Source of the DNA: Octopus bimaculoides
Taxonomy: Eukaryota
Direction: 5' to 3'
NCBI RefSeq assembly: GCF_001194135.2
Contig: NC_068983.1
Span: forward strand, 89,430,709 to 89,483,088
DNA: 52,380 nucleotides
The position numbers were made by a program, and so were the translations under genes. The notes beneath the pieces are model-generated. The model was not told the origin of the DNA, made no database searches, and saw nothing but the letters and a program-made list of their open reading frames with translations. This document shows positions 4,626 through 47,600 of this stretch, piece after piece. How positions within the stretch are numbered: the first letter of the stretch is position 1; each line of letters begins with the position of its first letter.

Positions 4626-5621
4626 TAACAACTAAGCCACACACACATATATACATTCACGTACACATACTAGTACATCTAGAGGAAACATGGAATTCAT
4701 TGAGTAGCGAAATAGACACTAACGTGTGTGTGACATGCTGGTAGTTATAGATTGGTATAGCCTGGGGCATATGGTGTTGGTTGTAATTGTTGTTGTTTAG
4801 CTCCAGGCTGGCCTTTATCATGCAGGTTTATGATCAAAGATGTTCCAGTTATGACCTCTTTCTTCAAATATAGTATAAGTAGGGTTGCATAATCCAATGT
4901 ATCCTTGTTAGGCAGAATAATGGGATTTAAAGGAAATTTAGTTGCTATTTCTAGCAGGTTGAATAACTATGTACAAGTTCCTTTGTTAACCCAGTTGCTA
5001 CAGACGATGCTGATATTGCTACTGTTGATGCAATTGCTGCAATTTTATTGACGTTCTTGATATTTTTGTATTACTGTTGCTATTGTTGATATTATGATGA
5101 TAATGTTTTGTTGTTTGTGTTGTTGAGTAGCCCCAAGTCAACTCAGATCAAGCAGTCTCATGTTATTGAAAGAGTCATTTAAACAATGAGGCATGACTTG
5201 CAGATCCATGTCCTCAAGTTTGCCATGTCTTCATCTAGATGAGGGCTATACTGCATATTTCAATATGCAGTATAGTCCTCATCTATATGGAGGGCAGTCT
5301 GACAATCTGGACGTTTTGCACTCACTCCACTGTCCAGTCTAGTTCTGTGTGTCCATAGATTTTGTCAGTGAATACAGCAAGTAGGCAAGGTGTACTCAAT
5401 TAGACTGTAATAGTTGCTGTTCCTCTGCATTTCTTGTTGGGGGTATGCAACCAAAGCTCAATGTTTGTGTTTTGTGAAACTATTGATATTGCAACTATTT
5501 CTCTATGCTTGTGTTCCTTGTTTTTGTTCATGTTGAGTGGGAGAAATAGGTTTAGTCATGCTCTGAGTTATTGTATGTGTGTTTGGCAGTGTTACCAACT
5601 TAAAATCACAATTTTATGCTA

Positions 5622-6006
5622 GGCGCAGGAGTGGCTATGTGGTAAGTAGCTTGCTTACCAACCACATGGTTCCGGGTTCAGTCCCACTGTGTGGCACCTT
5701 GAGCAAATGTCTTCTACTATAGCCTCAGGCTGACCAAAGCCTTGTGAGTGGATTTGATAGACGGAAACTGAAAGAAGCCTGTCGTATATATGTATATATA
5801 TATGTGTGTCTGTGTTTGTTCCCCCAACATCGCTTGATAACCGATGCTGGTGTGTTTATGTCCCCGTAACTTAGCGGTTCGGCAAAAGAGACCGATAGAA
5901 TAACTACTAGACTTACAAAGAATAAGTCCTGGGGTTGATTTGCTCGACTAAACGCAGTGCTCCAGCATGGCTGCAGTCAAATGACTGAAACAAGTAAAAG
6001 AGTAAA
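5622..6006 (+). mobile_element. SINE family A (tRNA-derived head), nested in the hAT left end
   Basis: A-box-like tggctatgtggt and B-box-like ggttcagtccc; high identity to 9487-9868 and 26830-27233. Confidence 0.9.
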
Positions 6007-6126: not shown

Positions 6127-8072
6127 TTATATTCTGCATTGAGAAATAATTTCTTGAATTTCACTGATTTGATCACTTTCAGCTGCAGTGCCTAGGTCTT
6201 GACTTATACATCCCTTATTAATTATGTGTTTTAGAATATCGAAATTTTTGCAACATCTGCCATATCTTTGCAGGCCATATTTTATAGACATTATTGATCT
6301 AAGCATAGGAAGATGCATTTTGTTTTTCAATTTTGATTTGATTACACCCATTCTACTGAACAACCGTTCAACTTCTGCATTTGAGTTTGGCAATGTCAGT
6401 AGATTAATGGCAAAATTTGCAACATCTCTAAAAAGGATTTCCTCCAGTAGCATCTTTATATTCCCAGACTTCCCACCAGAATGCTTCAGTATTGGACATA
6501 TTTGTCCATTTAACTAAACGAATGCTAGTAAACTGAACTTCAATTGAAGCAATTTTTTCTTCATTCAAATGCATTGCTTCTAAGACAGGTAAAATTGGCT
6601 CTTTGAAATGCTGCAAAATATTAATATATTAATATATCAGTATATTAATATTTTCTGGCAAGCGGTGCCTGAGCTCTTTATAAAGGCAGAGTAAAAATTG
6701 TTGTGCTCTTTTGCAAATATTATTTTCTTCAGTGGCTGTTATAGTCTTCTTGATAATCATTTCTGCTACCTTTCTCTACCTGTAGCCTAAATTTGGTTTA
6801 GGATCCAGAAAATTTTCAATAGAAGCATCCGGATCAAGAGGATCAATTCTACATGTTGGCAACACTATCATATTAGCAACAGATTTGATCAAATTTGAAA
6901 GATTTTCAAGTAATTTTGTTTTGTTGACAGTGTTTGATTCAAACAGTTTATTCACTTCCTGAACATGTTTTGAAATTAGATGCAAAAATAAGAAGTAAAG
7001 TTCATTCCTTGAATTACAAAACATTTCATGTAATGCTTGTGCTGTAAAGCATTTTTCTTTTGTAGTTGTAGTTTGGAAGTGAGTTTGCAATTCAAACCAT
7101 TGGCTTAAAATTCTATTTACAGCTGGTTCTATTAACAGCCCCCTAGTTGTACAAGAATTCACAATCTTCAAAGGCTCTTTATCATTGATAGTAAGGTAAA
7201 GTTATTTGTAGGCACTAGTCTTGTTGAAGAATGAGAGAACTATTTATAGGTTTTGGATACTAAAATATCTAAATTTATGGGCAGGCATTCAGTAAAAGTG
7301 TGCCAACTGTAAAGAATGACATACACATCTAAATAGAAGTAATGATGGAACTTCTTTTAATTTCTGGAAAACATCATTGTTGACTCCTATCATTACTCTA
7401 GCATTGTCGGTTCCTATAGCCAGTAAACTTTTTATATTTCTTTTTCACTAATTTAATTTTTAAGGCATCTACAATGCCATCTACATCACATACATGTTTC
7501 TGAAGATATCATACTGAGATATGTATGTACCACTTTTTTGTGAGTGTCACTGTAATATATGATAACAATTCCTAACAACTTGTTTATTGATATATCATTG
7601 GATTCATCTATTAACAGGCTAAATTTTCTATCTCCTATATCAGAAATCAAATCTCCATCAAAATATGGAGCTAGAACATTTCTCACAATATTTGCACATT
7701 TTGTATGATGCAACTTCACTTTGGACATAATATCACTATCAGACATATAATTCTTGCATTACTCTATTAAGTGATCACAGCTATTAAATGATGAGTAGCA
7801 ACAAATAAACATTGCATAGACATTTTATCATTTTTGGTTTTAATAAAATTGGTAAGAGGAATCATTTGCTGTGGTGTTGATACTTTATGTTTCTTTGTTT
7901 TACAGTGGCTTACTAAAAGAGAATATTTTGCCAACATATTACATTTACAATATCTGCAATGTGCTTTAGATTGGTCACTAGGTACTTCACACAACCACCT
8001 AGTAAACATTGGCGTCTTAAGCCATTCCTTTCGGAATTTTTGCTGGTACAACTTTGTCTTTTCTTTGCTCAT
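6127..8072 (-). pseudogene. hAT transposase, frameshifted (BED-type Zn finger, DDE core, C-terminal dimerisation domain)
   Basis: Fragments in the expected order: WLCEVPSDQSKAHCRYCKC...HCKTKKH; FSLLIDESNDIS; TRGLLIEPAVNRILSQW; LLTLPNSNAEVERLFSRMGVIKSKLKNKM. Confidence 0.9.
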
Positions 8073-9486
8073 TATAATATAGTGGGAAGCAAGAAAATAA
8101 ATTGAATGATTAATAAAAATATAAAATTGAAAACACAACTTATCAGTTTGCTGCTAACAATTCTTTCATTTGCCGTTAACAATTCTTATGTTTGCTGCTT
8201 ACAAATTCTTGAGGTGAAGAATACTGATTCAGGATGCAGGGTGGCCAACTTATTAATGGAAAAGTAAATTCTGCAGAAATCCTAAAACTGTGTTCTGATA
8301 TAAACCTGGGAAATCATATTTCACTTCAAATCTTACAATATCTATAGGTAAAACTACAAATATAACTACAATACTTGAAAAAGAAATTAGTAGAAATATA
8401 AAGGGGGAAACCCTGCCACCCCTGTACTTCTACACAAGACATATAATCCAAAACAAGCATGAAAAAAACACAGGCCTATTTTAAAACAGTCAAACTGAAA
8501 GTAAATAAATCAACCTATCATGATAAAAAACTCATCACTACAGGATAAAGCATTGTGAGGACGAATTTCCATGCTTTCATTCTGTAGCGAACTCTAGTGA
8601 ACTCCCTCTCTCTATTATATAAGTACATACGAACATAGCAGATAACAGCTAACCTTTGGGTACTGTTTTGGACCCTGTTGTTAATGCTAAATAAAATTTT
8701 AAACCTGCTATTTTCCTTGTTAAATGCTTGATTCAAAAATTTTCTACCAAATGCTGAAAAAAATGCTAGATCTAGCATAAAATATACTAAATTGGCAACC
8801 CTAGGTGTTTGGCTAGTTGGAGGTGGTATTATTTCGCAGTGACATGGACAGTAGCAACAAGCATTACCCTTTGCATGTCTAGGCTTTCAGTATTTTTTTA
8901 TTTCATTACAAAGGTGGTTTGTGGGTTGTGTACTTGTTTGGCTTGTTATTTTCTTAGTTGATGTGCATGTGTGATGAGTTGGTGGAAGTAATTGCCATGA
9001 GGTTGAGGCAGCTGGATGTATAGAGTAGGTCATGTTTCAGGTAGAGTTGTTCTCATGTTGGTGTGCGTTAGTCTAGATTGTTTGGGATGTAAAAGGAGCA
9101 ATAGCTGAGTTTTGGCAATGTTATATAATTGAAGTTAGCTTGAAAGGTAATCAGAGATTTGTAAGGATTAGAATTTTAGTGAGTTGAATAGTAATGTGTA
9201 GGAAGAATGTGTAGGAAGAATGTGTGCGTATGTGTGTGGCAAGACTGTTTTTACTTTTGGAGATTAGATTATCATGTTACTATTCACTTATGTTTGCAAG
9301 AAGGGACCGCATGATTAGCATGTGGTGTCTAGCTTCTATTGCATTTAGGTGATACCTATATATTGAAGGTTAACATGAATAAAATGGTGGTATCATCTTC
9401 AAATGAGTTTGTATAATTAGAAATAACAACGAGGAAGTCACTAACTTACAGAGTTTTGAATATCATAAACATAAATTCGATAAATA

Positions 9487-9868
9487 GGCACAGGAGTGGC
9501 TGTGTGGTAAGTAGCTTGCTTACTAACCACATGGTTCCGGGTTCAGTCCCACTGCGTGGCACCTTGGGCAAGTGTCTTCTACTATAGCCCTGGGCTGACC
9601 AAAGCCTTGTGAGTGAATTTGGTAGACGGAAACTGAAAGAAGCCCGTCGTATATATGTATATATATGTGTGTGTTTGTCCCCCCAACATCGCTTGACAAC
9701 CGATGCTAGTGTGTTTACGTCCCCGTAACTTAGCGGTTTGGCAAAATAGACTGATAGAATAAGTACTAGGCTTACAAAGAATAAGTCCTGGGGCCGATTT
9801 GCTCGACTAAACGCAGTGCCCCAGCATGGCCACAGTCAAATGGCTGAAACAAGTAAGAGTAAAGAGAG
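9487..9868 (+). mobile_element. SINE family A, full length
   Basis: Colinear with 5622-6006: ggcacaggagtggctgtgtggtaag...ctgaaacaagtaagag. Confidence 0.9.
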
Positions 9869-10324
9869 AATATACTCAGGTACACCATAATTGATAGCAT
9901 TAAGTTAAAGAGAAATCTACAAATGCACACTAGTGAAGTGGTTTCACATAAGCTTCTAATCCTCAGTGTGAGACAGATTAAGGCTAATAGCTGAGCAAGT
10001 TTTCTAAGAGTTTTTCATGCCTTACATGGTCCATACCCACATGGTCCAAAGTTTCACTGATACCAAGTACGACAACATTATTTTCAGTGATTGTTGAATT
10101 CAAAGACCATTGCTGTGTTGACAGGGTGAAGCTAATTTCTGACACATCTAGTTTTATGGAAACTAAGAAAGAAAAGAAACTCATGATATAAAAGATGCAA
10201 CAGTTTTCTTCTCTTTGACATACTGGAAGTAGAGGTGGTAAAATGGTAGTTGGCACAGTCAGGGAAGTCGCATCCTTTTGAGAAAAGCCTACACTATTGT
10301 ATATTTCCATAGGCTGAAATAGTG

Positions 10325-21720: not shown

Positions 21721-22326
21721 TTTTTCATTCTTCTAAAGTAGAAAGAATAAGTATTAGTCAATATAATCAACTATATCTATGAAGTCAATGCCCTAATGTA
21801 GAAATAATTTAATGACTGAAACCAATAAATAATACAAGAACACTTTTCCTAAAAAGCAAAGTTATTTCAAAATCAGAAAAATACTCAGACAAGTGATTCA
21901 CACAGTAAGTACAGTTCATATCAAATAAGCAATAAATATGCAGTTACTTGTTATATTCATGGATTAAACTTTACAAAAATATATTCTGTAAAAGAAACTA
22001 AAACCATTATTATATAATATTACTGAAAAGTCTTTCCAGAAAGCTCTGAGAAAGCAATATTTTTTTTTAAATTACATAATTTTTTTAATATAATTCTGTA
22101 TTTCTATGATGAGAAATTTTATATATTATGTATTGTGTGTGTGTGTATACATATAGATATATGTGTTTGTGTGTGTGTGTATGTGTGTGTGTGTGTATAC
22201 ATATAGATATATGTGTTTGTGTGTGTGAGTTGTCTAAGATACCATAAGTCAGGAAAAGATGCACTCGTATATCAGTCAGAAGAGTGGGTATATCATTTGA
22301 AATGTATAATATTAAATATTTATCAT

Positions 22327-22418
22327 GGCTGATATTGCCAATCGTTTTTGTGTAAAGAATACAATGGAGTGTTAGGTAACAAGCCGATTATATAACTTTA
22401 AGATCATCAGAGTTAGCC
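22327..22418 (-). ncRNA. Hammerhead ribozyme remnant, family 2 (type I topology)
   Basis: GGCTAACT-CTGATGA-tcttaaag...ctttacac-aAAA-acgattgg-CA-atatcagcc. The CUGAUGA core is intact. GAAA and stem II are decayed in a way consistent with CpG loss. Confidence 0.6.
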
Positions 22419-23260
22419 AATATGGAAGGGAATATGGTGACTGCTTTCTATTGTCGGAGGTTGATTAGCACAACCAGTCTGCGGCTGCTGTGAAAAAAGT
22501 GATGGAATGGAAAGGGGCCAAGGGATTAGTTTAGGAGTTATGTCCCTGGGTTGGGTATGTTGTGAAGCCGGCAAGAGCTACCTTGAAGTGGGGAAAGTGT
22601 GTATTATTAATGTGGTGCTCCTATGGAGATGGGGTGTGTGGTATGTGTAGTGGTGTCATATATATAATTTTTTCCAGGGGTGTAGGTATATATAGTTGTG
22701 TTTGTTTGTCTGTTTTCTTTCTGTAAAGGATAAAGCTGTGGGGTGGGGATTGTGTGTGCGTGTGTGTGGGGTCTGTGTATATGTGGGTGTACAATTTGTG
22801 TGAAAGGGTATGTGTTGGGGGTGGTAGGAGACAGTTTATTTTGTGGGATGTCTGCATGTGTGTATATAGGTGCCTTGGTGTGTACTTTGGTCAAACTCTT
22901 TTTGCCAGGCTCAAGGGCATTGGTGGAAGGTCATTTGCAGAAGGCCAAGACAGGAGACCTGTGATTGGAGTCATGGTAGGGTGTGCAGGTATATATACCT
23001 ACACCCCTGAAAAAAATTATACATATGACACCGCTACACATACCACACACCCCATCTCCATAGGAGCACCACGTTAATAATATACACTTTCCCCACTTCA
23101 AGGCAACTCTTGCCGGCTTCATAGCATACCCAACCAAGAGACATAACTCTTAAACTAATCCCTTGGCCCTTTTTCATTCCACCACCTTTTACACAGCAGC
23201 TGCTGACCGGTTGTACTAATCCACCTCTGACAATAGAGACCAGTCACCATATTCCCTTCC

Positions 23261-23374
23261 ATATTGGCTAACTCTGTCATCAGAGTTAGCCAATATAACG
23301 TAAAGTTATATAATCAGTTTGTTACATAACACTCCATTGTATTCTTTACGTGAAACTGATTGATAAGATCAACC
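23261..23374 (+). ncRNA. Hammerhead ribozyme remnant, family 2
   Basis: Perfect 8-bp stem II ACGTAAAG (23298-23305) / CTTTACGT (23344-23351), then GAAA-ctgattga-TA-agatcaacc. The 5' core is broken by a local inversion. Confidence 0.6.
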
Positions 23375-23822
23375 ATGATAGATATTTAATACTATACATT
23401 TTAAATAATACATACACACACACACACACACACACACATTTATATATATTCATACATGTATATAATCCTGAACACCCCCACACAACTGAAGGTGAACTAA
23501 CTGATTACAATAAATAAGAACTGAGTGAACTGTCAAGGAGGTAGTTGATGGTGGTTAGTTCAACAGTTTTGGTTAACTGTGTTAGTTCAACGTGCGCTGG
23601 TTTAACAGTCAGTAGTTGAACAGTGAATACTGAGTATTATATCTACATTTGAGTAGTGCATTCTGTGTTAACATATATTTCTGCAATAGGTTATTTTTAG
23701 ATAACCACAACCAACTATTTATTAGTGTAATACCCTTTTACACCAGATGTATAAACCCATGTCATAACATTTTTGGCAAGAAGCTTATTCGAAGCTCATA
23801 CTGGACTAATTTTTGCTTGAAC

Positions 23823-26797: not shown

Positions 26798-26829
26798 CAT
26801 ATACATATATACATATACATATATACATA

Positions 26830-27233
26830 GGTGTAGGAGTGGCTGTGTGGTAAGTAGCTTGCTTATGAACTACATGGTTTTGGGTACAGTCCCACTGCAT
26901 GGCACCTTGGGCAAGTGTCTTCTACTATAGCCTCAGGTCGACCAAAGCCTTGTGAGTGGACATAATCTGAAAGAAGCCAGTCGTATATATGTATATATAT
27001 GTATGTATATGTGTGTATATGTTTGTGTGTCTGTATTTGTCCCCCTAACCCAACATCGCTTGACAACCGATGCTGGTGTGTTTACGTCCCCGTAACTTAG
27101 TGGTTCGGCAAAAGAGACCGATAGAATAAGTACTAGGCTTACAAAGAAGGTCCAGGGGTCGATTTGCTCGACTAAAGGTGGTGCTCCAGCATGGCCATAG
27201 TCAAATAACTGAAACAAGTAAAAGAGTAAAAGA
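26830..27233 (+). mobile_element. SINE family A, full length
   Basis: Colinear with 5622-6006 and 9487-9868. Confidence 0.9.
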
Positions 27234-31367: not shown

Positions 31368-32437
31368 GATTACTCTATAAAACTTTCTGCAAGATAGATC
31401 ATTCAACTATTTTAGCTACAGACCACAGATTACTATAATAGGAAGGGGAGGACAAAAGATTTCATATGCATTTTTCTTTAAGCATGCCCAGAGGGAGCAG
31501 AATGGAAACACTGCAACATATCAAATCTGGATAGGTTTCTTTTGAAATGAAGTAACTATTTCAGTTCAGTTTCCAATGATTTGGACAATTTTTCAATGTC
31601 GTTATGAATATATTATGTTCTTAACTCAATTTTTGAGTTATATAAAAAATAAACGAACATGCAGTGCATGACTTTCATGCCTCGACTGCACACCACTGAT
31701 ATATATATACATACATACATACATATANNNNNNNNNNNNNNNNNNNNNNNNNNNNNNNNNNNNNNNNNNNNNNNNNNNNNNNNNNNNNNNNNNNNNNNNN
31801 NNNNNNNNNNNNNNNNNNNNNNNNNNNNNNNNNNNNNNNNNNNNNNNNNNNNNNNNNNNNNNNNNNNNNNNNNNNNNNNNNNNNNNNNNNNNNNNNNNNN
31901 NNNNNNNNNNNNNNNNNNNNNNNNNNNNNNNNNNNNNNNNNNNNNNNNNNNNNNNNNNNNNNNNNNNNNNNNNNNNNNNNNNNNNNNNNNNNNNNNNNNN
32001 NNNNNNNNNNNNNNNNNNNNNNNNNNNNNNNNNNNNNNNNNNNNNNNNNNNNNNNNNNNNNNNNNNNNNNNNNNNNNNNNNGATTACTCTATAAAACTTT
32101 CTGCAAGATAGATCATTCAACTATTTTAGCTACAGACCACAGATTACTATAATAGGAAGGGGAGGACAAAAGATTTCATATGCATTTTTCTTTAAGCATG
32201 CCCAGAGGGAGCAGAATGGAAACACTGCAACATATCAAATCTGGATAGGTTTCTTTTGAAATGAAGTAACTATTTCAGTTCAGTTTCCAATGATTTGGAC
32301 AATTTTTCAATGTCGTTATGAATATATTATGTTCTTAACTCAATTTTTGAGTTATATAAAAAATAAACGAACATGCAGTGCATGACTTTCATGCCTCGAC
32401 TGCACACCACTGATATATATATACATATACATATATA
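31368..32437 (+). other. ~355-bp duplication on both sides of an N gap (probable assembly overlap)
   Basis: 31368-31727 and 32082-32437 appear identical, and the second copy starts right at the gap edge. Confidence 0.8.
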
Positions 32438-32439
32438 TG

Positions 32440-32580
32440 ACAGGCTTCTTTCAGTTTCCATCCACTCACAAGGCTTTGGTCGGCCCGAGGCTATAGTAGC
32501 AGACACTTACTCAAGGTGCCATGCAGTGGTACTGAACCCTGAACCATGTGGTTGGTAAGCAAGCTACTTACCACACAACC
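32440..32580 (-). mobile_element. SINE family A, 5' half
   Basis: Reverse complement of the SINE head: aaccatgtggttggtaagcaagctacttaccacac. Confidence 0.8.
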
Positions 32581-33870
32581 TGTATTTCAATAAAAATCTA
32601 TAATTTGCCCTTCTTCCCCCCACCCCTGGGGCGTTGGGTAAATTATATGATAAAATGAGAAAGTTGCAAAAAGTGAAAGTCTGAGGTAATAACAGAGACA
32701 AGGTGACTTATATCAGTGAAGACAAGAACAGTGGTGAGAATGGGGTGATTATGTTAATAAAGCTGTCATATACACACGACACTGCATACATACTTTTGTA
32801 AATATGTAGATACAACATACACAGAAAGGTGGGTTTGAGAAATATATTGCTTTAAGGAGAGAGGGGTTAGGTGGCTTTTCTGCTGTCCATTGCAAAGAAA
32901 CACTCCCACACAGACACACACACATACATACATATGTCTACTATATACCATTTTAAACTCATGATTACTTGTGTGTGCATTTGTAAATTTGTGTGTGTGT
33001 ATGTGTGTGTGTGTGTGTGCGTGTGTGTGTATGTATGTANNNNNNNNNNGTGTGTGTGTGTGTGTGTGACATCCTATAACTGTCTGTCTCTCTACTTTTC
33101 TAGAGTCTTCCCTGTTGCTGTCACATATTATGAGATTTTAAAACTGTCAAAATTTTCAAATTTGGTATATTGAGATAATTTTCCATGTTAAATGCGATTT
33201 TGTTATTTATTTGTTCCTAACATCCAGTTGAATTATAGGCGAATTGGATTTCAATAAAAATCTATTACTGGTCAACTCATTTATTTTATTCATATGCATA
33301 TTTGCTTGTTAAAATAATATAGGGACATTCCTTAGTTTGTAATAACTATTTTTAGCAATACACAATTACCATAAAGGTTACTAAATATTTAATGGCTTTA
33401 TTACACCTAACTGATTCTAAAATTTACATATTGACATAGTTTTGGGGATAGGAATGGGAGTGGAACTAAAACAGGAACTGAACATGAAACAGTGTAATGG
33501 AAATGGGAACTGGAAATAACCCTTGCTTTTCCAGGTATTACTGGGTAATTCAGCTAGTATGTATATAGATATATATATATATATATACANNNNNNNNNNA
33601 CTGCTGGGAGGGTACCCAATTATTGTTACACTAGTGTTATACCAAGTGTAATAAGTGGGTGCGGCTAAAAGGGGTGTGTGTTTTACCCTAAATTTATATA
33701 GCAATTAGAAAATGGAGGATAATATGCTGTACCCAACGACTTGCAGGCAGTGTATTCCGTTGAATTAATTAACTTATTTTGTAATTAAAGTGACAAAAAA
33801 CCACAAAATACAAATGTTTATGACAAACCATGTTATATTGACAATCAGGTTTACAAATAAAAGTACATTA

Positions 33871-34031
33871 GGAATTTGAGAATAAACATACACTTACAGC
33901 TGTTTTGGCCTAGCGTTGGCATGCCCCATTTTATCCGAATAGCTCCTGCCAGAGTAATTAGCGGATGAAATGCTGAAATGGGGGTACATGCACGATTCGC
34001 TAGGCCTCTTCAGAGATTCACAAAAAATTCC
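33871..34031 (-). ncRNA. Hammerhead ribozyme family 1, inverted copy with G12 to A
   Basis: Minus strand reads CTGAAGA-GGCCTAGCG...CGCTAGGCC-aAAA-CAGCTG-TA-AG. Stem II is a perfect 9 bp, but the catalytic G12 (position 33906) is A. Confidence 0.8.
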
Positions 34032-34439
34032 ATACAAATATACAGTAAGAGATAAAAACAAAAATGAAATAAAAATAAAAATAAAAATAAGGGTACAGCG
34101 AGAATAAAATAAATAAATAAATAAATGAAAAATGAAAATATAAAATATATAAATATAAAAAGATAAGGCACATAAAAAGCCTACAAACAGTACATGAGGT
34201 CATACAAATAGTTATAGACACTCCATGGCTATGCACATGGACTTATATATTAGAGTGTCTAGAACTATTTGTATGACCTCATGTACTGTTTGTAGGCGTT
34301 TTATGGGCCTTATATTTTTATATTTTCATATTTTTATATTTTATATCTTCATTTTTCATTTATTTATTTATTTATTTCATTCTCGCTGCACCCTTATTTT
34401 TATTTCATTTTTTTTTTATCTCTTACTGTATATTTGTAT

Positions 34440-34600
34440 GGAATTTTTTGTGAATCTCTGAAGAAGCCTAGCGAATCGTGCATGTACCCCCATTTCAGTA
34501 TTTCATCTGCTAATTACTCTGGCAGAAGCTATTCGGATAGAATGGAGCATGCCAACGCTAGGCCGAAACAGCTGTAAGTTTATGTTTATTCTTAAATTCC
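34440..34600 (+). ncRNA. Type I hammerhead ribozyme, family 1, with 82-nt stem-II insert
   Basis: CTGAAGA (34458-34464); stem II AGCCTAGCG / CGCTAGGCC (34465-34473 / 34556-34564); GAAA (34565-34568); palindromic stem III ACAGCTGT; GTA site ending at 34576; stem I CT/AG, GAAT/ATTC, GGAATTT/AAATTCC. Confidence 0.85.
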
Positions 34601-34859
34601 TAATGTACTTTTATTTGTAAACCCGATTGTCAATATAACATGGTTTGTCATAAACATTTGTATTTTGTGGTTTTTTGTCATTTTAGTTACAAAATAAGTT
34701 AATTAATTCAACGGAATACACTGTCTGCAAGTCATTGGGTACAGCATATTATCCTCCATTTTCTAATTGCTATATATATATTTATACATATATGCATACA
34801 TACATGCATACATACATACATGCATACATATACACATATATATACACACATATACATAC

Positions 34860-34900
<41 letters not shown>

Positions 34901-35211
34901 CATATANNNNNNNNNNNNNNNNNNNNNNNNNNNNNNNNNNNNNNNNNNNNNNNNNNNNNNNNNNNNNNNNNNNNNNNNNNNNNNNNNNNNNNNNNNNNNN
35001 NNNNNNNNNNNNNNNNNNNNNNNNNNNNNNNNNNNNNNNNNNNNNNNNNNNNNNNNNNNNNNNNNNNNNNNNNNNNNNNNNNNNNNNNNNNNNNNNNNNN
35101 NNNNNNNNNNNNNNNNNNNNNNNNNNNNNNNNNNNNNNNNNNNNNNNNNNNNNNNNNNNNNNNNNNNNNNNNNNNNNNNNNNNNNNNNNNNNNNNNNNNN
35201 NNNNNNNNNNN

Positions 35212-35268
<57 letters not shown>

Positions 35269-35349
35269 TATATACATATACACACACACGCACACACACA
35301 ATGTCTAAGAATTCATAAGTCAGAAAAAAATGCACTTGCATATTTGTGA

Positions 35350-36400
35350 ATAGAGTGGGTATATTACTCAAAGTGTACTGTATAATATATCCAGTATGGC
35401 TGATCTTACCAATCGCTTTCGCGCTAGGGTTTCCATGGAGTGTTAAGTAACAACCAGATTATGTACCCCTGAGCATTTATGGAATGAAATGTGGCAACTG
35501 TTCTCTATTGGTGAAGGTGAAAAGATACATTTGGTTTGTGGTTACTGTGAAGAAGACATCGTAACGAACTGAGCAAGGGTTAATTTAAGAGTTATGTCCC
35601 TTGGCACCAAAGCTCTATCTCTAGAGGTATTGCAAGGTGACAAGAGTTTTCTCAAAAAGAGTGTATGGGAAATGTGCATATGTTTTAGGGTTGGTGTTCT
35701 TGTAGAACTGGAATGTGTGTAGTGTTTTCAAGGTGGGGCCCAAAGGTGACATAAGCATCTGTGTGTTCGTTTGTGTGTCTTTTGTTTATGCCTTGGGTAA
35801 AACTTTGGTTAAATTATTTGGGGCATTAATGTATGCATGGAGTGTGTGTAGGGGTACTATATGTGTGTGGGCTTATATTGGTGGGGTAGAAAACGGTCTA
35901 TTGGGTGGATGTCCACTGTTTCCAGGCATGTGTGTCTGTGAGTGCATCTATGTATGTTCTGATCAAACTCTTTGCTGGATTTCCAGGTATTTGTTGTGGG
36001 AGGACTGAAATTGGGGGACTGACAATTATAGTCATGATGGGTCACATAGGTATGATAGGATGTACTTCCTTTCATGTGGGCAAGGATTAAAAATTTCACT
36101 TCCACTGTTCAAGTAGATACCTGGGTACTGAGAGTTCTTTAATATCATTCTTTCTCAGCTAACATAATCTGCACTTCCTGCTGCTATTGAAGTAAGCCTT
36201 GCACTTCTCTAATATCCTCCACTTTATACGGTGCTCTGTGGTGCTTTCTTTCAATGACTATATGTACTTGGCCAGGGTTGTGGCATTTCATTTCTCTGGG
36301 ATGCTGAAAGAGGACTTGTGATTGTTATAACCAATTCACCATGAAAATCAATTGCATTGATATTTGGACAATGCACATCTTCTAAAAGATGAAACATAAG
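35350..36400 (-). mobile_element. Penelope-like element 3' part: GIY-YIG-region C-terminus plus ~700-nt 3' region with a family-2 hammerhead remnant
   Basis: 36055-36330 minus reads HKSSFSIPEK*NATTLAKYI*SLKE...IKWRILEKCKAYFNSSRKCRLC / EKRMIL...LNSGSEIFNPCPHERKYIL, the typical Penelope C-terminal pattern. ccctagcgcGAAAgcgattggTAagatcagcc lies at 35398-35429. Confidence 0.8.
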
Positions 36401-38269: not shown

Positions 38270-40465
38270 TCCTAACATCGGGCTACAACAAGTAACCTTA
38301 GATGCCAAGAACCCTCCTATTGGGTTACAGCAAGTAACCTTAGATGCCAAGAACGCTCCCAAGTATCAAAGCTGTCCCTAATAACACTGTTTTCTGGAGC
38401 TGTGCTTAACTGGGTTTTATGCCTATGTCTTCTATCCATCAGTTCAGATCTTTAGGGATAGTTCTCAATGCACCTAAAACTACTGGGATAAATTTTACCC
38501 ACACTTTCAATAGTCTCTGTAATTCAATAGCTAGGTCCTGGTACTTTGCTATTTTTTCTACATCTCTCATATTAACTTTTTCATCGTTTGGGACTGTAAA
38601 GTCAATTTATCTGGCACTTTTTATTCTCTTTATCTACTACTACCAAATCAAGCCTTCTAGCTTCTATTACTCTGGCAGCCTGAATGTTAAAGTCCCACAA
38701 CATCTTGTATTTCTTACTTTATAGTGCTTTACTAGGTTCATGTTCATACCATTTATCAGTTTGTTCAAATCCTAGCTTTCTACATAGCGCCAAGTGGGTT
38801 ACTCTCCCTAGATTGTCATATCTTTTCTTGTATTATTTCTATTCCAGCATGCTACATTCATTTACTCTATGAGTAACACTTTTCTCTTTTAATTTGCATA
38901 ATCTACATGGGGAATCTACTTGGTTTTTGTCTATCTTGGCTTTTATCTAATTAGTCCTTAATGCTTGATCTTGTGTAGCTACTAACAGACTTTCTGTCCC
39001 CTCTTTAGCTTTCCTTTCTGCAACCATAACCACATCTCACTACTACTATTTGCTGCAACTATCTTTGGGAATCTACCATGTAACACCTTCTCCTGCCAGT
39101 TAGATATTTTTTATTCTTTTTTCTGGTTTTTAACTTCGTTTGGGTTTTTGGTTTCCCTATGTCTTGTTGTGACTCTAGCATCTTTTAATAAACTTTCTTC
39201 ACTATTATCTACATAGGAGTCTATATCTATTCTAGCTAACTCCATGCAGTCTTCTACTGATATTAACCCACTTCTGCCTTCCTTTCTAGGTAGGTATAAT
39301 CTTGCTACTCCTGCCCTTGGGTGGAGTCCTCCATTCATACTGAATTCCTTCCTTGCTCTTCTGTCTAGCTTTTCTAATCCAGTTTTTGTCCAATCTACAA
39401 AATCCTCTGAGTATCTAAGTAATGATACTGCCCGAGTATTTACAGCCTTCACTAGATTTGGACCATTTGGCTTTGACTTCATTAGCTTCTTCACTTTTCT
39501 GATGTACTCCTTCTCAATTTTCGTTTTTATTTCTGTAGTTAGTACTCTGTCAGATTCTAATACTCTGAGATACTTATACCTCTCTCCTCCTTTCAATGAT
39601 TTTAATGTCTAACCATCTGGTAATTGGATGCCTTCACTGTTGACTAGATGACCTTTTCTCATGACTAACATTGGACACTTATCTATGCCAAATTCCATAC
39701 CCATATCTTTGCTGAAGTGTCTTACAGTCTGTATTAAAGAATATCTCTTTTTCATTCTTACTAAAAAGCTTTATCCATGTAGACCAAATGGTTAATTTTT
39801 CCCTTACTATTTCTGAACTGATACCCTGCTTTGCCTTCCTTAATACTAAACTGAGGGGGCCCTGGAAAATTCCTCTTTTGATATTAACTTTCCCTAACAG
39901 TGTGTCGCCTGAGTAGAGGTCTACTTTCCATTTCTTCATGTTACAGCTAAATAATTCTCTTATGTTGTTTGCTATACTGAATATATTCAAACATGTCATA
40001 GGCTTTCCTATAATCTATCCATACTATTGTTAGATTTTTCTTTCTCGCTTTTACTTCATTTGTCTTGTCTATATGTAATAGATCATGCAACCCTCTAACC
40101 TTCTTCCTGCAACCTTTCCATTCTTTTAGTAGTAAATTCTGGTTGTCAAGGTGCTCATAAGTGCTTTCTGAAAGCATTCCTGTAAACAGCTTCCACACTA
40201 ATGGTAAGCAAGTGATTGGTCTATAGTTACTAGCTGCATTACCCTTGCTCTTATCTTTCATAATGAGTATTGTCCTCCTTCTAGTCATCCAATCTGGTAT
40301 TATTCCTCCATTAAGGCAATCCTGAAGTTGCTCCTTCAGCCCCCCATGTAAACCACTGAATTTCTTTTGCCAGTACCCTTGAACTAAATCTGGTCCTGGG
40401 CCCTTCCAATTTGGCATTTTCCCTAACATTTTACTCATTAATGCACTAGTTTTGGTTGCTTTACT
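38270..40465 (-). mobile_element. R4/Dong-clade non-LTR retrotransposon, 5'-truncated (RT plus restriction-like endonuclease)
   Basis: NWKGPGPDLVQGYW, NYRPITCLPLVWKL, NIKRGIFQG, KAVNTRAVSLLRYS, GGLHPRAGVARLYLPRKEGRSGL; REL domain LWDFNIQ...IEARRLD...DFTVPND...KYQDLAIE...IPVVLGAL. 3' tandem duplication at 38283-38360. Confidence 0.85.
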
Positions 40466-40502
40466 ATTATCATCATCATCATTATTATTATAATTATTAT
40501 CA

Positions 40503-40720
40503 AGGTGGCAAGCTGGCAGAATCATTAGCATGCCGCGCAAAATGCTTCGTGGTATTTTGCCTGTTGCTACATTCTGAGTTCAAATTCCACTGAGGTCGGC
40601 TTTGCTTATCCTTTTGGGGTTGATAAATTAAGTACCAGTGAAACACTGGGGTCAATGAAATCGACATGTCCCCTCCCCACAAATTTCAGGCCTTGTGCCT
40701 TTAGTAGAAAGGATTATTAT
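40503..40720 (+). mobile_element. SINE family B with (ATT)n tail
   Basis: aggtggcaagctggcagaatcattagc...ggccttgtgcctttagtagaaaggattattatt. Confidence 0.85.
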
Positions 40721-43987: not shown

Positions 43988-46900
43988 CATCATCATCGTT
44001 TAACGTCCGCTTTCCATGCTAGCATGGGTTGGACGATTTGACTGAGGACTGGTGAACCAGATGGCTACACAAGGCTCCAATCTGATTTGGAGAGTTTCTA
44101 CAGCTGGATGCCCTTCCTAACGCCAACCACTCCAAGAGTGTAGTGGGTGCTTTTACGTTCGAATGTCTTTTCACGTGCCACCGGCACAAGTGCCAGGAAG
44201 GCAATGCTGGTAACGATCATGCTCGAACGGTGCTCTTAGTGCTTCACTGGTACAGGTGCCATCACGATTTCACTTTTGCTTGCCTCAACAGGTCTTCACA
44301 AGCTGAGTTTAGTGTCCAATGAAGGAGATGTTGGCATGAGTGCCAGTCATCAAATTTAGTTCGATTACGATTTCACTTGCCTCAACAGGTTTTTGCAAGC
44401 GGAGTTTAGTGTCCAATGAAGGAAAGGTACGCATGAGTGGGCTGGCTACATCCCTAGCAGAGGCTTTGGATTTTGGTCTCACTTGGCTTGCTGGGTTTTC
44501 TCACGCACAGCATATTTCCAAAGGTCTTGGTCACAAGTCATTGCCTCAGTTAGGACTAATGTTCGAACACCGTGCTTCACCACCTCACCNNNNNNNNNNA
44601 GGACTAATGTTCGAACACCGTGCTTCACCACCTCACCCCAGGTCTTCCTGGGCCTACCTCTTCCACAGGTTCCCTCAACCGCTAGGGTGTGGTACTTTTT
44701 CACACAGCTGTCCTCCTCCATTCTCGCGACGTGACCATACCAGCGCAATTGTCTCTCTTGCACACCACAACTGATGCTTCTTAGGTTCAACTTTTCTCTC
44801 AAGGTACTTACACTCTGTCGAGCATGCACACTGACATTACACATCCATCGGAGCATACTGGCTTCATTCTTTGTGAGCTTAGACATGTCCTTAGCAGTCA
44901 CAGCCCATGTTTCACTGCCATGTAGCATGGCTGTTCGTACACATGCGTCATACAGTCTGCCTTTTACTCTGAGTGAGAGGCGCTTTGTCACCAGCAGAGG
45001 TAAGAGCTCTCTGAGCTTTGCCCAGGCTATTCTTATTCTAGCAGCTACACTTTCAATGCACCCACCCCCACTACTAACTTGGTCACCTAGATAGCGGAAG
45101 CTATAGACTACTTCTAGTTTTTCTCCCTGGAATGTGGCAAAAGTTGTTTTCTGCACATTTTCAGTGTTTATTGCTCCTGAATATCTGCCACATGCAGATA
45201 TTAACTTCCTAGTTAACCTTCCTTTGATATTGCTGCACCTCTTATGTGTCCATAGCTTGCACTGGGTACATCTTATAGAGTTTCTACCTACACCTTTTCT
45301 ACAGATCGAACAGGGCCATCTACCTGAAGGGGTTTGTGTTTTGTCTAACTTCCTACTTATTAGGACTTTGGTTTTAGCTAGGTTGACTCTACGGCCCTTC
45401 GATTCTAGTCCTTGCTTTCACACCTGAAACTTCTCCTCTAGTTCTGATAGTGACTCAGCAATTAGTACAAGGTCATTAGCATAGAGGAGCTCCCAGGGGT
45501 ATCCTGTCTTGAATTCCTCTGTTATTACCTGGAGAACTATGATAAATAGGAGGGGGCTGAGGACGGAACCTTGGTGGACCCCTACCTCTACCTGGAATTC
45601 TTCACTGTACTCGTTGCCAACCCTCACCTTACTGACAGCATCTCTGTACATGGCTCGCACAGCTCTCACTAACCATTCTTCTATCCCTAGTTTTCTCATT
45701 GACCACCAGATAAGGGATCGGGGTACCCTGTCAAAGGCTTTCTCCATGTCAACGAAAGCCAGGTACAGAGGTTTATCTTTGGCTAGGTATTTCTCCTGAA
45801 GCTGTCTTACCAGAAATATAGCATCAGTGGTGCTTTTCCCAGGCACGAACCCAAACTGCATCTCATCTATACTGACTCTCTCCCTAATTAGTTGGGCTAT
45901 GACCCTCTCCGTGACTTTCATTACCTGGTCCAACAACTTGATACCTCTGTATTTGTATCTAAAGCACTACCTTTACCCTTGTAGCAGTTGACTATGGTGC
46001 TGCTACACCAGTCATTGGGTATGACTCCTTCGTGTATTATCTGGTTAACAATACGGTTGACTAGGCTATAGCTGACACTGCCAGATATTTTGTGCATCTC
46101 TGTAGTGATTCCTGATGGGCCGGGGCCTTTCCCTGTCTTCATACTCTTAATTGCTTTATCTACCATAGTACTGTCAACTTGGATAGCTTGTCCCTCTGTT
46201 GGGTCAACATTTGGCAGACTCTCTTTCTCCCATTCATTCTGTTTATTGAGCAATCTTTCATAGTGGCGTCTCCAAACCTCTTTCTTTGCAGCCTCATTCA
46301 GTGCAAGTGTACCATCATCCATGTGAACACATTTCTCTCCCATGACATCACGATTCTCTATCACACACTGTCTTGCAACACAAAATACCTCAAGCCTTTG
46401 GTCCTCACGGCGCAGAACATTGGCAAATTTTTTCTTTTCTGCTTTCTCTCTTGCTAAATAAACCTGTCGCATAGTTTCCCTTCTGACAGTCTGATACAAT
46501 TCTCTGCTACAACCATTCTTCCAGTCCTTCCAAGCTTGTTTCTTTTGTCTAATAGCCCTGTCAACAACATTGGGTTGAGATCAGACTTTGCACCATTCAC
46601 AGATCTGGTCAGTGGCCCTCCAATTGTCTTCTACACCGCGTGAAGCTATATCCCCTTCTATTTCGTCAAAGGCTTCGAGTAATAAGTCTCTAAATATCTG
46701 TCCATTCGCAGGATCTTTGAGCTTCTCCTCCTTGCTGGTCGTCTTCTGGGCAACCACTTAGCCCTGATCCTGAAGTCACTAACTACTTGTCTATGTTGTA
46801 GGGTACATTCTTCACCTGGGAAGGTTTTGGCATTTATAAGCAGACATCTTTCCCTTTTCTTGGCGAGGATGTAGTCAATTTGGCTAGTGTGTCTGCCAGA

Positions 46901-47600
46901 ATGGTAGGTGACTGGCAGGTTTCCTGAAGTTAGTATTGCAGACCATAAGGTCATTTGCATCACAGAACTCCAGCAGCCTGGTTCCTTCCTCATTGCGGGA
47001 ACCAAAACCATAGCCTCCATGTACACCATGGAAGGCCCCTGAATGTTGTCCAACATGACCATTGAAGTCACCAGCCACAAAGAGAAGGTCCCTGTCATTC
47101 GTCAATGAGGTCGTCTGCAAGAGGGTGTCATAAAATTGGTCTTTCTGTCCATTAGGTAGCCCGGGCTGAGGGGCATAGGCTGAGATAATGGTTGCTAACC
47201 CATGGTGAAGGACTAATCTAATCTTAAGTATTCTATCACATACTCTGGTTACCTCGATTACCTTATCCACTCATTTCTCTCATTTCTCCGCAAGAAGTAT
47301 ACCCACGCCTCCGACCCTGTCTGTGTTCCCTGCCTAGAAAATCTTGTACCTGTGTTCTTTGCCTGTGAGGAACCTAGTGGAACCTCCTCTCTACCTTACT
47401 TCTTGGAGGCAGCAGATATCGACACATCTCCGTTCAAGCATCTCAACAATCTCACCAAACCTACCTTTCAGTGTGCCAACGTTGATAGTGCCAACCCTGA
47501 GGGTGTGGGAGGTATGGGCCCATGAGACCCTAGGGCGGGGAACAGTAGCGTCATGTACTTGAAAAGAAAGCTTGCATTTTGCAGAATTCATAAACAGTCA
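43988..47600 (-). mobile_element. Near full-length RTE-clade LINE (APE-RT, frameshifted); 5' UTR probably extends to ~48200
   Basis: GTINVGTLKGR/DICCLQEVR, SAYAPQ, GDFNGHVG, QFGFVPGKST, DMEKAFDRV, GVHQGSVLSPLLF, LLYANDLVL, YLGD, LRWYGHVARM, GRGRPRKTW; 3' UTR ends in a (GAT)n tail. Confidence 0.95.

What the first reader, a model, noticed from the sequence alone, without database searches (positions are those of the whole stretch)
33696..34775. 1-kb palindrome carrying two divergently oriented hammerhead ribozymes with an unusually large structured stem II
Seen: each arm holds a type I hammerhead layout. The parts are CUGAAGA, a stem II (GGCCUAGCG/CGCUAGGCC: 9 bp in the left arm, 8 bp plus an A·C mismatch in the right), GAAA, a palindromic stem III ACAGCUGU, a GUA site (predicted cut after 34576) and a bulged stem I. 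The 82-nt loop II can itself extend the helix (GCAUG/CAUGC, CCCCAUUU/AAAUGGGG, AUCCG/CGGAU in the left-arm copy). The two copies carry different single lesions: the right arm has A10.1·C11.1, and the left arm has G12 to A at a CpG. The inferred ancestor is therefore canonical. Known: Penelope-like element pLTRs and retrozymes carry hammerheads, often minimal ones with palindromic stem III that act as dimers, and PLE insertions often carry inverted copies. Inferred: this is a non-coding retrozyme-like or non-autonomous PLE family whose large stem-II domain may be a lineage-specific ribozyme variant.
Basis: partly seen in the sequence, partly recalled or inferred. Interest (0 to 1): 0.88.

Follow-up and report, generated by a model that had tools for sequence, protein, structure and literature searches.

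The report
Decayed hammerhead-like motifs in octopus palindrome
A 1.1-kb inverted repeat in an octopus genome carries, on each arm, a mutated copy of a hammerhead-ribozyme-like motif of the kind found in Penelope-like retrotransposons, and it is most likely a dead transposon fragment rather than a working or clearly new ribozyme.

Summary
The palindrome is real. Its arms are 33692-34223 and 34253-34779, about 95% alike, around a 29-nt centre.

Neither copy is a canonical hammerhead:
- The right arm has an A10.1·C11.1 mismatch.
- The left arm has G12->A, a CpG decay.
- No Rfam hammerhead model matches, even at E<=10.
- The 82-nt cap on helix II folds no better than shuffled sequence (z -1.6 to -1.8).

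The best-case ancestor would be a complete type I hammerhead: a 9-bp helix II, a self-complementary ACAGCUGU helix III and a weak helix I. Such a motif arises by chance about 8e-4 times per window.

The window is octopus DNA, rich in transposable elements. The context fits a Penelope-like-element (PLE) insertion: head-to-head copies with their inner (5') ends at the centre, 3' ends outward, set between (TA)n tracts, with no ORF.

The arms have diverged as fast inside the motif as outside it, so the locus is decaying neutrally. I could reach no other copy, because no searchable collection holds eukaryotic genomes. Family-wide conservation, covariation and the "large stem II variant" claim therefore remain untested.

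Verdict: probably a dead PLE-type hammerhead relic. Modest interest.

The parts
33692..34779 (.). Whole palindrome (inverted duplication), about 1.09 kb
   Evidence: the arms are about 95% identical outside indels, around a 29-nt centre
33692..34223 (-). Left arm. The sense strand of the hammerhead-like motif is the - strand, with its 3' end at 33692
34224..34252 (.). Unpaired 29-nt centre of the palindrome, where the inner (5') ends of the two copies meet
34253..34779 (+). Right arm. The sense strand is +, with its 3' end at about 34779, abutting a (TA)n/(TACA)n tract
34453..34581 (+). Right hammerhead-like motif. Helix I 34453-57 / 34577-81 (4 of 5 pairs); CUGAAGA 34458-64; helix II 34465-73 / 34556-64 with an A10.1·C11.1 mismatch at 34465/34564; GAAA 34565-68; ACAGCUGU 34568-75; A17 at 34576 (predicted cut after 34576)
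   Evidence: sequence; one-lesion descriptor hit; helix II present in the MFE fold
34474..34555 (+). 82-nt insert capping helix II, right copy
   Evidence: z -1.62, no more structured than shuffles
33890..34018 (-). Left hammerhead-like motif. CUGAAGA 34013-34007; helix II 34006-33998 / 33915-33907 (9 bp, G10.1-C11.1 intact); AAAA 33906-33903 (G12->A); ACAGCUGU 33903-33896; A17 at 33895; helix I only 3 of 5-6 pairs
33916..33997 (-). 82-nt insert capping helix II, left copy. Its MFE fold contains GCAUG/CAUGC, CCCCAUUU/AAAUGGGG and AUCCG/CGGAU
   Evidence: the pairings are present, but z is only -1.76
33600..33691 (.). 92 nt of single-copy sequence between the left N gap and the palindrome. It may be part of the insertion (a 'tail') or original flank
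   Evidence: no other match in the window or in the fetched octopus loci
33560..33589 (.). (TA)n tract left of the 10-N gap; candidate target microsatellite
34780..35270 (.). (TA)n/(TACA)n microsatellite to the right of the palindrome, interrupted by the N gap at 34907-35211

Best explanation
This is a dead, non-coding fragment of a hammerhead-bearing retroelement of the Penelope-like (PLE) kind in an octopus genome.

Inferred history:
- About 540 nt of the element's 3' part was inserted into a (TA)n microsatellite as two head-to-head copies, with their inner (5') ends at the centre and their 3' ends outward.
- Because the two copies end within about 29 nt of each other, they most likely arose together, by snap-back or template switching at integration.
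- Both arms then decayed neutrally, partly by CpG deamination.

Inferred function of the source element:
- Its RNA carried a minimal type I hammerhead: CUGAAGA, a 9-bp G+C-rich helix II, GAAA, and a 2-bp helix III whose sequence ACAGCUGU is self-complementary.
- Two sense copies, in a tandem transcript or in trans, could pair into an 8-bp intermolecular helix III and cut 3' of GUA, as proposed for PLE hammerheads.
- Helix II is closed by an 82-nt segment instead of a short loop. That segment was already there before the duplication. Whether it is a family feature or a private insertion is unknown.

At this locus the ribozyme is almost certainly inactive. The left copy has lost G12. The right copy has lost the G10.1-C11.1 pair. 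The two copies are antisense to each other on any one transcript.

Shown: the palindrome, the motif anatomy, the lesions, the neutral divergence, the host and the flanks.
Inferred: the hammerhead ancestry, the PLE affiliation and the dimer mechanism.
For: - Anatomy: the palindrome and motif are at the stated coordinates.
- Beyond chance: the best-case ancestor passes a full descriptor whose chance rate is 0.016 per Mb, about 8e-4 per window. With a fully palindromic helix III there were no hits in 62 Mb.
- Lesion polarity: the G12 lesion is a CpG->CpA change, so G12 was ancestral.
- Folding: helix II forms in the MFE folds of both copies, and the 100-nt domain has z -3.9 and -3.5.
- Dimer: cofolding two left copies forms the 8-bp intermolecular ACAGCUGU helix, at -95.9 versus 2 x -43.4 kcal/mol.
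- Match to published PLE hammerheads: helix II larger than usual (6-8 bp), helix I 2-5 bp, G10.1-C11.1, palindromic 15.2-16.2 and loop 3, action as dimers, and mostly dispersed non-coding copies (PMC4209133; PMC6765202; PMC7761336).
- Match to PLE insertion habits: an inverted 5'-truncated copy adjacent at the 5' end, the hammerhead near the 3' end, a microsatellite/(TA)n bias, and assembly trouble (PMC8557442). The locus shows outward-pointing sense strands, (TA)n on both sides and N gaps on both sides.
- Host: the window is octopus. Proteins encoded by transposable elements in the window are 81% identical to an O. sinensis protein and 92% identical to an O. vulgaris protein.
- Neutral decay: there are 9 differences in the 166-nt motif region, the same rate as the rest of the arms. 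Changes at paired sites keep pairing (wobble) in 2 cases and break it in 3.
Against: - No Rfam hammerhead model matches, even at E<=10.
- Neither copy is canonical.
- The polarity of the 10.1 difference is undetermined.
- Published PLE hammerheads have short helix-II loops and usually an extra nucleotide between A9 and 10.1. Here there is an 82-nt cap and no extra nucleotide.
- No RT or GIY-YIG coding remnant lies in ORFs of >=45 aa across 30.0-37.4 kb.
- No second copy of the family was found in the window, in 42 kb of O. vulgaris / O. sinensis DNA, or in any searchable collection.
- No other hammerhead, canonical or minimal, was seen in 94 kb of octopus DNA, so the prior density in this genome is unknown.
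- Chance motifs of this quality are expected about 40 times in a 2.7-Gb genome if the palindromic helix III is not required.
- Helix I is weak.
Confidence: 0.55

Rival explanations
1. Chance resemblance. The palindrome is a foldback or MITE-like DNA element, or an ordinary inverted duplication of non-coding repeat DNA. Its 9-bp G+C-rich clamp happens to be flanked by CUGAAGA and GAAA-like strings, and no hammerhead ever existed.
For: - No Rfam hit, and neither copy is canonical.
- A one-lesion core plus helix II motif, with no demand on helices III and I, occurs about 0.25 times per shuffled window.
- Strict motifs are expected about 40 times per 2.7-Gb genome by chance.
- The long spacer allowed between the core halves is what creates most of the chance opportunities.
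- The 82-nt insert is not significantly structured, helix I is weak, and there is no selection signal.
- No PLE protein remnant lies nearby.
- Perreault et al. warn that consensus-conforming hammerheads occur by chance in large data sets (PMC3088659).
Against: - The full best-case motif with helices III and I has a chance rate of about 8e-4 per window, and about 1/50 of that within the 1.1-kb palindrome itself. With the 8-nt self-complementary helix III there were no hits in 62 Mb.
- The one-lesion full descriptor gave 0 hits in 60 shuffles.
- Several independent context features agree with PLE habits: outward sense orientation, (TA)n flanks and a head-to-head layout.
- No TSD or recognisable DNA-transposon termini are visible at the ends.
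Confidence: 0.3
2. A real hammerhead relic, but the large stem II is not a ribozyme feature. An unrelated ~80-nt sequence inserted into a normal short loop 2 of one source copy before the inverted duplication, which disabled or merely decorated it.
For: - Both arms share the insert, so it predates the duplication.
- The insert alone folds no better than shuffles.
- All described PLE and retrozyme hammerheads have short loop 2.
Against: - The insert matches nothing else in the window or in the fetched octopus DNA, and no TSD flanks it.
- In the left copy it forms about 18-25 bp coaxial with helix II.
- Craig et al. note PLE 3' UTRs in which the hammerhead core halves lie 35-50 nt apart.
Confidence: 0.2
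3. A retrozyme: a non-autonomous element expressed as a small self-cleaving circular RNA.
For: - It has a type I motif, low G+C and no ORF.
- Helix III of 2 bp plus a tetraloop is as in invertebrate type I hammerheads (PMC7229834).
Against: - Metazoan retrozymes are direct tandem repeats of 150-450 bp, each with a hammerhead. Here there is one sense copy per strand in an inverted pair, and no direct repeat of the unit.
- No loop 1 / loop 2 tertiary-contact layout is possible with a 100-nt helix II.
Confidence: 0.05
4. Assembly artefact: the palindrome is a mis-join in a short contig bounded by gaps.
For: - The palindrome lies in a 1.3-kb contig between N gaps (33590-99 and 34907-35211).
- Other gaps in the window are flanked by redundant duplicates.
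- PLE-type structures are known to upset short-read assemblies.
Against: The arms differ at 28 positions plus indels, with a transition and CpG-decay spectrum. A fold-back mis-assembly of one copy would give identical arms.
Confidence: 0.05

Closest known systems
Minimal type I hammerheads of Penelope-like elements (Cervera & de la Pena 2014, PMC4209133; Lunse, Weinberg & Breaker 2017)
   Same: - Type I topology.
- A canonical CUGANGA / GAAA core in the inferred ancestor.
- Helix II longer than usual (9 bp here, 6-8 bp published).
- G10.1-C11.1 present in the left copy.
- A very short helix III with palindromic sequence, suited to dimer formation.
- A short, weak helix I.
- Copies mostly dispersed in non-coding DNA.
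   Different: - Helix II is capped by 82 nt instead of a short loop.
- There is no unpaired nucleotide between A9 and 10.1.
- No PLE ORF or direct pLTR is nearby.
- Both copies carry core or helix lesions.
- Family conservation was not shown.
PLE insertion architecture (Craig, Yushenova, Rodriguez & Arkhipova 2021, PMC8557442)
   Same: - An inverted 5'-truncated copy abutting the 5' end.
- The hammerhead near the 3' end.
- A microsatellite/(TA)n target bias.
- Assembly gaps around such insertions.
- That paper also notes 3' UTRs with hammerhead core halves 35-50 nt apart ('HHR_half_core').
   Different: - Here both copies are truncated at nearly the same point and no full-length unit follows.
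- The core halves are 100 nt apart, joined by a clean 9-bp helix.
- The strongest (TA)n bias was reported for Naiads, which lack canonical hammerheads.
Metazoan non-LTR retrozymes (Cervera & de la Pena 2020, PMC7229834)
   Same: Non-coding, low G+C, a type I hammerhead, and a helix III of 2 bp plus a tetraloop as in invertebrate motifs.
   Different: Retrozymes are direct tandem arrays of 150-450 bp, with helix I of about 6 bp, helix II of about 4 bp and loop-loop contacts. None of these is present here.
Sm-alpha / Sj-alpha SINE-like retroposons of schistosomes with a hammerhead (cited in PMC6765202)
   Same: A short non-coding dispersed retroposon carrying a type I hammerhead with a weak helix III.
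   Different: Those hammerheads are canonical, compact and demonstrably active. No sequence similarity was found, and no pol III features were seen here (no tRNA-like hit).
Discontinuous hammerhead in mammalian Clec2 3' UTRs (Martick et al. 2008; recalled from my own knowledge, not checked here)
   Same: It shows that a natural hammerhead can tolerate hundreds of nucleotides inserted in the loop of one helix.
   Different: A different helix, a different host and context, and conserved and active copies.

Membership tests
Hammerhead ribozyme (type I) | CUGANGA box (C3-A9) | tested here: met
   CUGAAGA at 34458-34464 (+) and 34013-34007 (-)
Hammerhead ribozyme (type I) | GAAA box (G12 A13 A14 A15.1) | tested here: inconclusive
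   The right copy has GAAA (34565-68). The left copy has AAAA (33906-03), a CpG->CpA change, so G12 was probably ancestral.
Hammerhead ribozyme (type I) | Helix II starting with the G10.1-C11.1 pair, flush with the core | tested here: inconclusive
   The left copy has 9 bp with G-C at 10.1/11.1. The right copy has A·C at 10.1/11.1 followed by 8 bp. The polarity of the G/A difference cannot be decided.
Hammerhead ribozyme (type I) | A15.1-U16.1 pair, helix III and a non-G residue at position 17 | tested here: met
   In GAAACAGCUGUA, A15.1-U16.1 and C-G close an AGCU loop, and A is at position 17. The 8-nt stretch is self-complementary, so the helix is stable only as a dimer.
Hammerhead ribozyme (type I) | Helix I pairing from 1.1-2.1 | tested here: inconclusive
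   The right copy pairs AGUUU with AAUCU at 4 of 5 positions. The left copy pairs only 3, and fails the descriptor.
Hammerhead ribozyme (type I) | Score at or above the gathering threshold of an Rfam hammerhead covariance model | tested here: not met
   No hammerhead hit at gathering, nor at E<=10 on 1.3 kb or 161 nt. The 82-nt insert and minimal helix III are expected to cost most of the score.
Hammerhead ribozyme (type I) | Conservation of the core and covariation of the helices across family members | not testable with these tools
   No other copy could be retrieved. The two arms show neutral divergence only.
Hammerhead ribozyme (type I) | Site-specific self-cleavage | not testable with these tools
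   Needs an in vitro transcription and cleavage assay.
Penelope-like element (PLE) | An ORF with a PLE reverse transcriptase and a GIY-YIG endonuclease | tested here: not met
   No Pfam domain in any ORF of >=45 aa across 30.0-37.4 kb. The reverse-transcriptase (RT) ORFs elsewhere in the window are non-LTR types. A truncated or non-autonomous copy would lack the ORF.
Penelope-like element (PLE) | pLTR or inverted 5'-truncated copy architecture, with 3' ends outward | tested here: met
   Head-to-head arms with the sense strands pointing outward (criterion from PMC8557442).
Penelope-like element (PLE) | Minimal hammerhead with palindromic helix III in the terminal repeat | tested here: inconclusive
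   The architecture matches, but both copies carry lesions and helix II has an atypical 82-nt cap.
Penelope-like element (PLE) | Insertion into microsatellite DNA | tested here: met
   (TA)n at 33560-89 and 34780-35270 bracket the segment, although N gaps intervene.
Metazoan retrozyme | Direct tandem repeats of 150-450 bp, each with a type I hammerhead | tested here: not met
   There is only an inverted pair, with no direct repeat of the unit in the window.
Metazoan retrozyme | Expression as small circular RNAs | not testable with these tools
   No transcriptome data were available.

The most novel reading that the evidence does not exclude
Octopus genomes may harbour a multi-copy, non-autonomous retroelement mobilised by PLEs. 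Its hammerhead would have a conserved ~100-nt helix-II domain (a 9-bp clamp plus an ~80-nt irregular hairpin) and would cleave as a dimer through the ACAGCUGU helix III. That would be a lineage-specific structural variant that current descriptors and Rfam models miss.
Probability: 0.22. Interest if true: 0.5.

Novelty: new member of a known kind. Interest (0 to 1): 0.3.

Why it matters
If the family exists and keeps the large helix-II cap, two things follow. Descriptor-based and Rfam-based censuses would be undercounting hammerheads whose core halves lie far apart. Cephalopods would also be added to the hosts of ribozyme-bearing retroelements.

As it stands, the locus itself is a decayed transposon relic with no sign of present function. 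Its main value is as a seed sequence for a genome-wide family search.

Tried and rejected
- **Rfam.** I scanned the whole window at gathering, and 1.3 kb and 161 nt at E<=10. There was no hammerhead hit. The 'miRNA' hits at the palindrome centre and in the TA/TACA microsatellite come from hairpin shape or low complexity.
- **tRNA-like or pol III origin.** ARAGORN found nothing.
- **Other copies in the window.** BLASTN with word size 9 found only the two arms.
- **Other copies in public collections.** Exact-pattern scans of viral contigs returned only chance 16-18-mers. Scans of metagenome contigs and of bacterial/archaeal genome contigs found nothing. None of these collections holds eukaryotic genomes.
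- **The spurious-ORF trick.** I used the 55-aa ORF that spans the motif as a protein query.
  - The word-indexed search found no homologue.
  - The exhaustive phmmer search gave two hits. The best, P0122, is a 59-nt minisatellite read as protein. It has CUCAAGA rather than CUGANGA and no Rfam hit, so I rejected it as chance inflated by repeats.
- **Sampling octopus DNA.** I fetched 42 kb of O. vulgaris and O. sinensis through proteins related to TE proteins encoded in the window. It held no copy of the arm and no hammerhead of any kind. The ENA relatives of the RT were not octopus.
- **Window ORFs in the protein collection.** None is present, so the source contig could not be extended.
- **A PLE ORF next to the palindrome.** None found.
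- **Supplementary consensus sequences of Craig et al. 2021.** Not held.
- **Lunse et al. 2017 full text.** Not held.
- **Bacterial-type promoter/terminator scan.** Irrelevant for this host and uninformative.
Full report

The inverted repeat is real. The repeat finder reports arms 33692-34074 and 34397-34779 (383 nt, 95% complementary). The pairing continues through an A/T-rich, indel-prone stretch, 34107-34223 against 34253-34369. A global alignment of the left arm with the reverse complement of the right gives 504 matches, 28 mismatches and 24 gap columns, around a 29-nt unpaired centre. BLAST finds only these two copies in the 52-kb window.

- Right arm, + strand:
  - CUGAAGA at 34458-64.
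  - Helix II at 34465-73 / 34556-64.
  - An 82-nt cap at 34474-34555.
  - GAAA at 34565-68.
  - ACAGCUGU at 34568-75.
  - A17 at 34576.
- Left arm, - strand:
  - CUGAAGA at 34013-07.
  - A perfect 9-bp helix II at 34006-33998 / 33915-07.
  - AAAA at 33906-03.
  - A17 at 33895.

The sense strands point outward from the centre.

**2. How good is the hammerhead?**

Neither copy is canonical. A strict descriptor finds nothing in the window. A descriptor that allows one lesion finds exactly the two arms. The right copy has A10.1·C11.1. The left copy has G12->A and also a poorer helix I.

Rfam gives no hammerhead match at the gathering score over the whole window. It gives none at E<=10 on 1.3 kb or on 161 nt. 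The large insert and the minimal helix III would be expected to cost most of the score, so this is a failed membership test, not proof of absence.

The G12 lesion is a CpG->CpA transition, so G12 was almost certainly ancestral. The G/A difference at 10.1 is not at a CpG, and its polarity cannot be decided from two copies. 'The ancestor was canonical' is therefore a best-case reconstruction.

That best-case sequence passes a full descriptor: core, helix II of at least 8 bp, helix III and helix I. In 62 Mb of composition-matched random sequence the descriptor's rate is 0.016 per Mb. That is about 8e-4 per window and about 40 per 2.7-Gb genome. If helix III must also be fully self-complementary, there were no random hits. 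The motif is thus well beyond chance for this window, but not so rare that chance can be dismissed genome-wide. Perreault et al. make the same point (PMC3088659).

**3. Is the large stem II 'structured'?**

The 100-nt domain folds with the 9-bp clamp in both copies and is more stable than shuffles (z -3.95 left, -3.48 right). The 82-nt cap alone is not: z -1.76 and -1.62, with 15 and 14 of 200 shuffles folding at least as well.

In the right copy they are partly lost.

Between the arms, changes at paired sites keep pairing as a wobble in 2 cases and break it in 3. That is what neutral transitions would give. The motif region differs at 9 of 166 positions, the same rate as the rest of the arms. 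Nothing has been under selection since the duplication.

**4. Where is it?**

The window is octopus DNA.
- A gag-like ORF (985-2247) is 81% identical to Octopus sinensis LOC118764025.
- An RTE-type reverse transcriptase is 92% identical to an O. vulgaris protein.
- Repeats in the window are 80-91% identical to the fetched O. vulgaris and O. sinensis loci.
- The window is rich in transposable elements: non-LTR reverse transcriptases, hAT remnants and a ~390-bp SINE-like repeat.

The palindrome sits in a 1.3-kb contig between two N gaps. It is bracketed by (TA)n tracts, at 33560-89 and 34780-35270, with 92 nt of single-copy sequence on the left. No ORF of 45 aa or more across 30.0-37.4 kb has any Pfam domain, so no PLE protein remnant lies next to it.

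**5. What is it?**

The core architecture is the one published for hammerheads of Penelope-like elements (PLEs) and for the thousands of dispersed 'minimal' type I motifs in animal genomes. Those have these features (PMC4209133; PMC6765202; PMC7761336):
- Helix II longer than usual (6-8 bp).
- A G10.1-C11.1 pair.
- Helix I of only 2-5 bp.
- Helix III reduced to one or two pairs with palindromic sequence, so that two copies form the active dimer.

Cofolding two left copies does form the 8-bp intermolecular ACAGCUGU helix.

The locus layout is the one Craig et al. describe for PLE insertions (PMC8557442):
- An inverted 5'-truncated copy abutting the 5' end.
- The hammerhead near the 3' end.
- A microsatellite target bias that includes (TA)n.
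- Frequent assembly trouble.

Because the two copies end within about 29 nt of each other, they probably arose in one event, by snap-back or template switching. This is an inference.

My best reading (confidence 0.55) is a dead, non-coding relic of a PLE-type, hammerhead-bearing retroelement. Both ribozyme copies are now disabled, and they are antisense to each other on any one transcript.

**6. What does not fit?**
- Described PLE hammerheads have a short loop 2 and usually an extra nucleotide after A9. Here there is an 82-nt cap and no extra nucleotide.
- No other hammerhead of any kind was seen in 94 kb of octopus DNA.
- Craig et al. do mention PLE 3' UTRs whose core halves lie 35-50 nt apart and fit no descriptor. 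That is the nearest precedent.

The main rival (0.3) is a chance motif in a foldback element or inverted duplication. A sub-variant of the best explanation is that the cap is a private insertion into a normal loop 2. It overlaps the best explanation rather than competing with it; taken as a separate statement, I give it about 0.2. The retrozyme reading fails its defining test, direct tandem repeats. An assembly artefact is unlikely, because the arms differ with a transition and CpG-decay spectrum.

**7. What could not be done?**

The decisive evidence is other genomic copies, a family consensus and covariation. It was out of reach because no searchable collection holds eukaryotic genomes. These attempts all failed:
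- Pattern scans of the viral, metagenome and prokaryote collections.
- A protein-space search with the ORF that spans the motif.
- Sampling of octopus loci through proteins related to TE proteins encoded in the window.

The only statistically 'significant' protein hit, P0122, is a 59-nt minisatellite translated as protein. It has no hammerhead.

**8. Verdict**

The sequence observation is accurate. The label 'two hammerhead ribozymes with a structured stem II' is an overstatement. The PLE-type affiliation is plausible and the best available explanation. The 'lineage-specific ribozyme variant' claim is untested. Novelty is a new member of a known kind. Interest is 0.3, rising to about 0.5 if a conserved family with the large helix-II cap is shown.

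Noticed in passing
window 31728-32081 and 44590-44599: These N gaps are flanked by redundant sequence. The 346 nt right of the first gap repeat sequence found just left of it. A 38-nt duplicate brackets the 10-N gap inside a LINE ORF, which is why ORF translations repeat 'GEVVKHGVRTLV'. These look like unmerged contig overlaps, that is, assembly redundancy.
   Followed up: partly
window 5620-6006, 9485-9870, 26821-27233, 32404-32580: A SINE-like repeat of about 390 bp is present at least four times in the window. It also occurs several times in the fetched O. vulgaris and O. sinensis loci, at 80-91% identity.
   Followed up: partly
window 44371-47270 (-): An RTE-type non-LTR retrotransposon with Exo_endo_phos_2 and RVT_1 domains in consecutive ORFs. 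It is 81% identical at the nucleotide level to a copy on O. vulgaris chromosome OX597814.1.
   Followed up: partly
P0003: A 194-aa 'RNA-directed DNA polymerase, partial [Escherichia coli]' on a 586-bp contig is 81% identical to the RT of this RTE-type LINE. It looks like animal DNA contaminating a bacterial assembly.
   Followed up: no
window 985-2247 (-): A 420-aa ORF with a CCHC-like knuckle and no Pfam hit. It is 81% identical to O. sinensis 'uncharacterized protein LOC118764025'. It is probably a gag-like TE protein annotated as a host gene.
   Followed up: partly
window 6127-8138 (-): Remnants of a hAT-type transposase. There is a C-terminal dimerisation domain hit at 6127-6453, with neighbouring ORFs on the same strand.
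   Followed up: no
window 39111-40579 (-): A second, more degraded non-LTR reverse-transcriptase remnant split over several ORFs. These fragments gave no Pfam hit.
   Followed up: no
window 34179-34294 and 34771-34900: Sub-threshold Rfam 'miRNA precursor' matches (mir-3149, mir-297 and others) fall on the palindrome centre and on the TA/TACA microsatellite. They reflect hairpin shape or low complexity, not miRNA genes.
   Followed up: yes
L046 2988-5293: An ENA contig carries 39 copies of a 59-nt minisatellite that a gene caller read as a 778-aa protein (P0122). It surfaced only because the repeats inflate the phmmer score.
   Followed up: yes
window 35302-35604 vs 22231-22550 and 23307-23410: The sequence right of the (TA)n tract shares a diverged repeat (69-75% identity) with two places near 22-23 kb. 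It is an unidentified older interspersed repeat.
   Followed up: no
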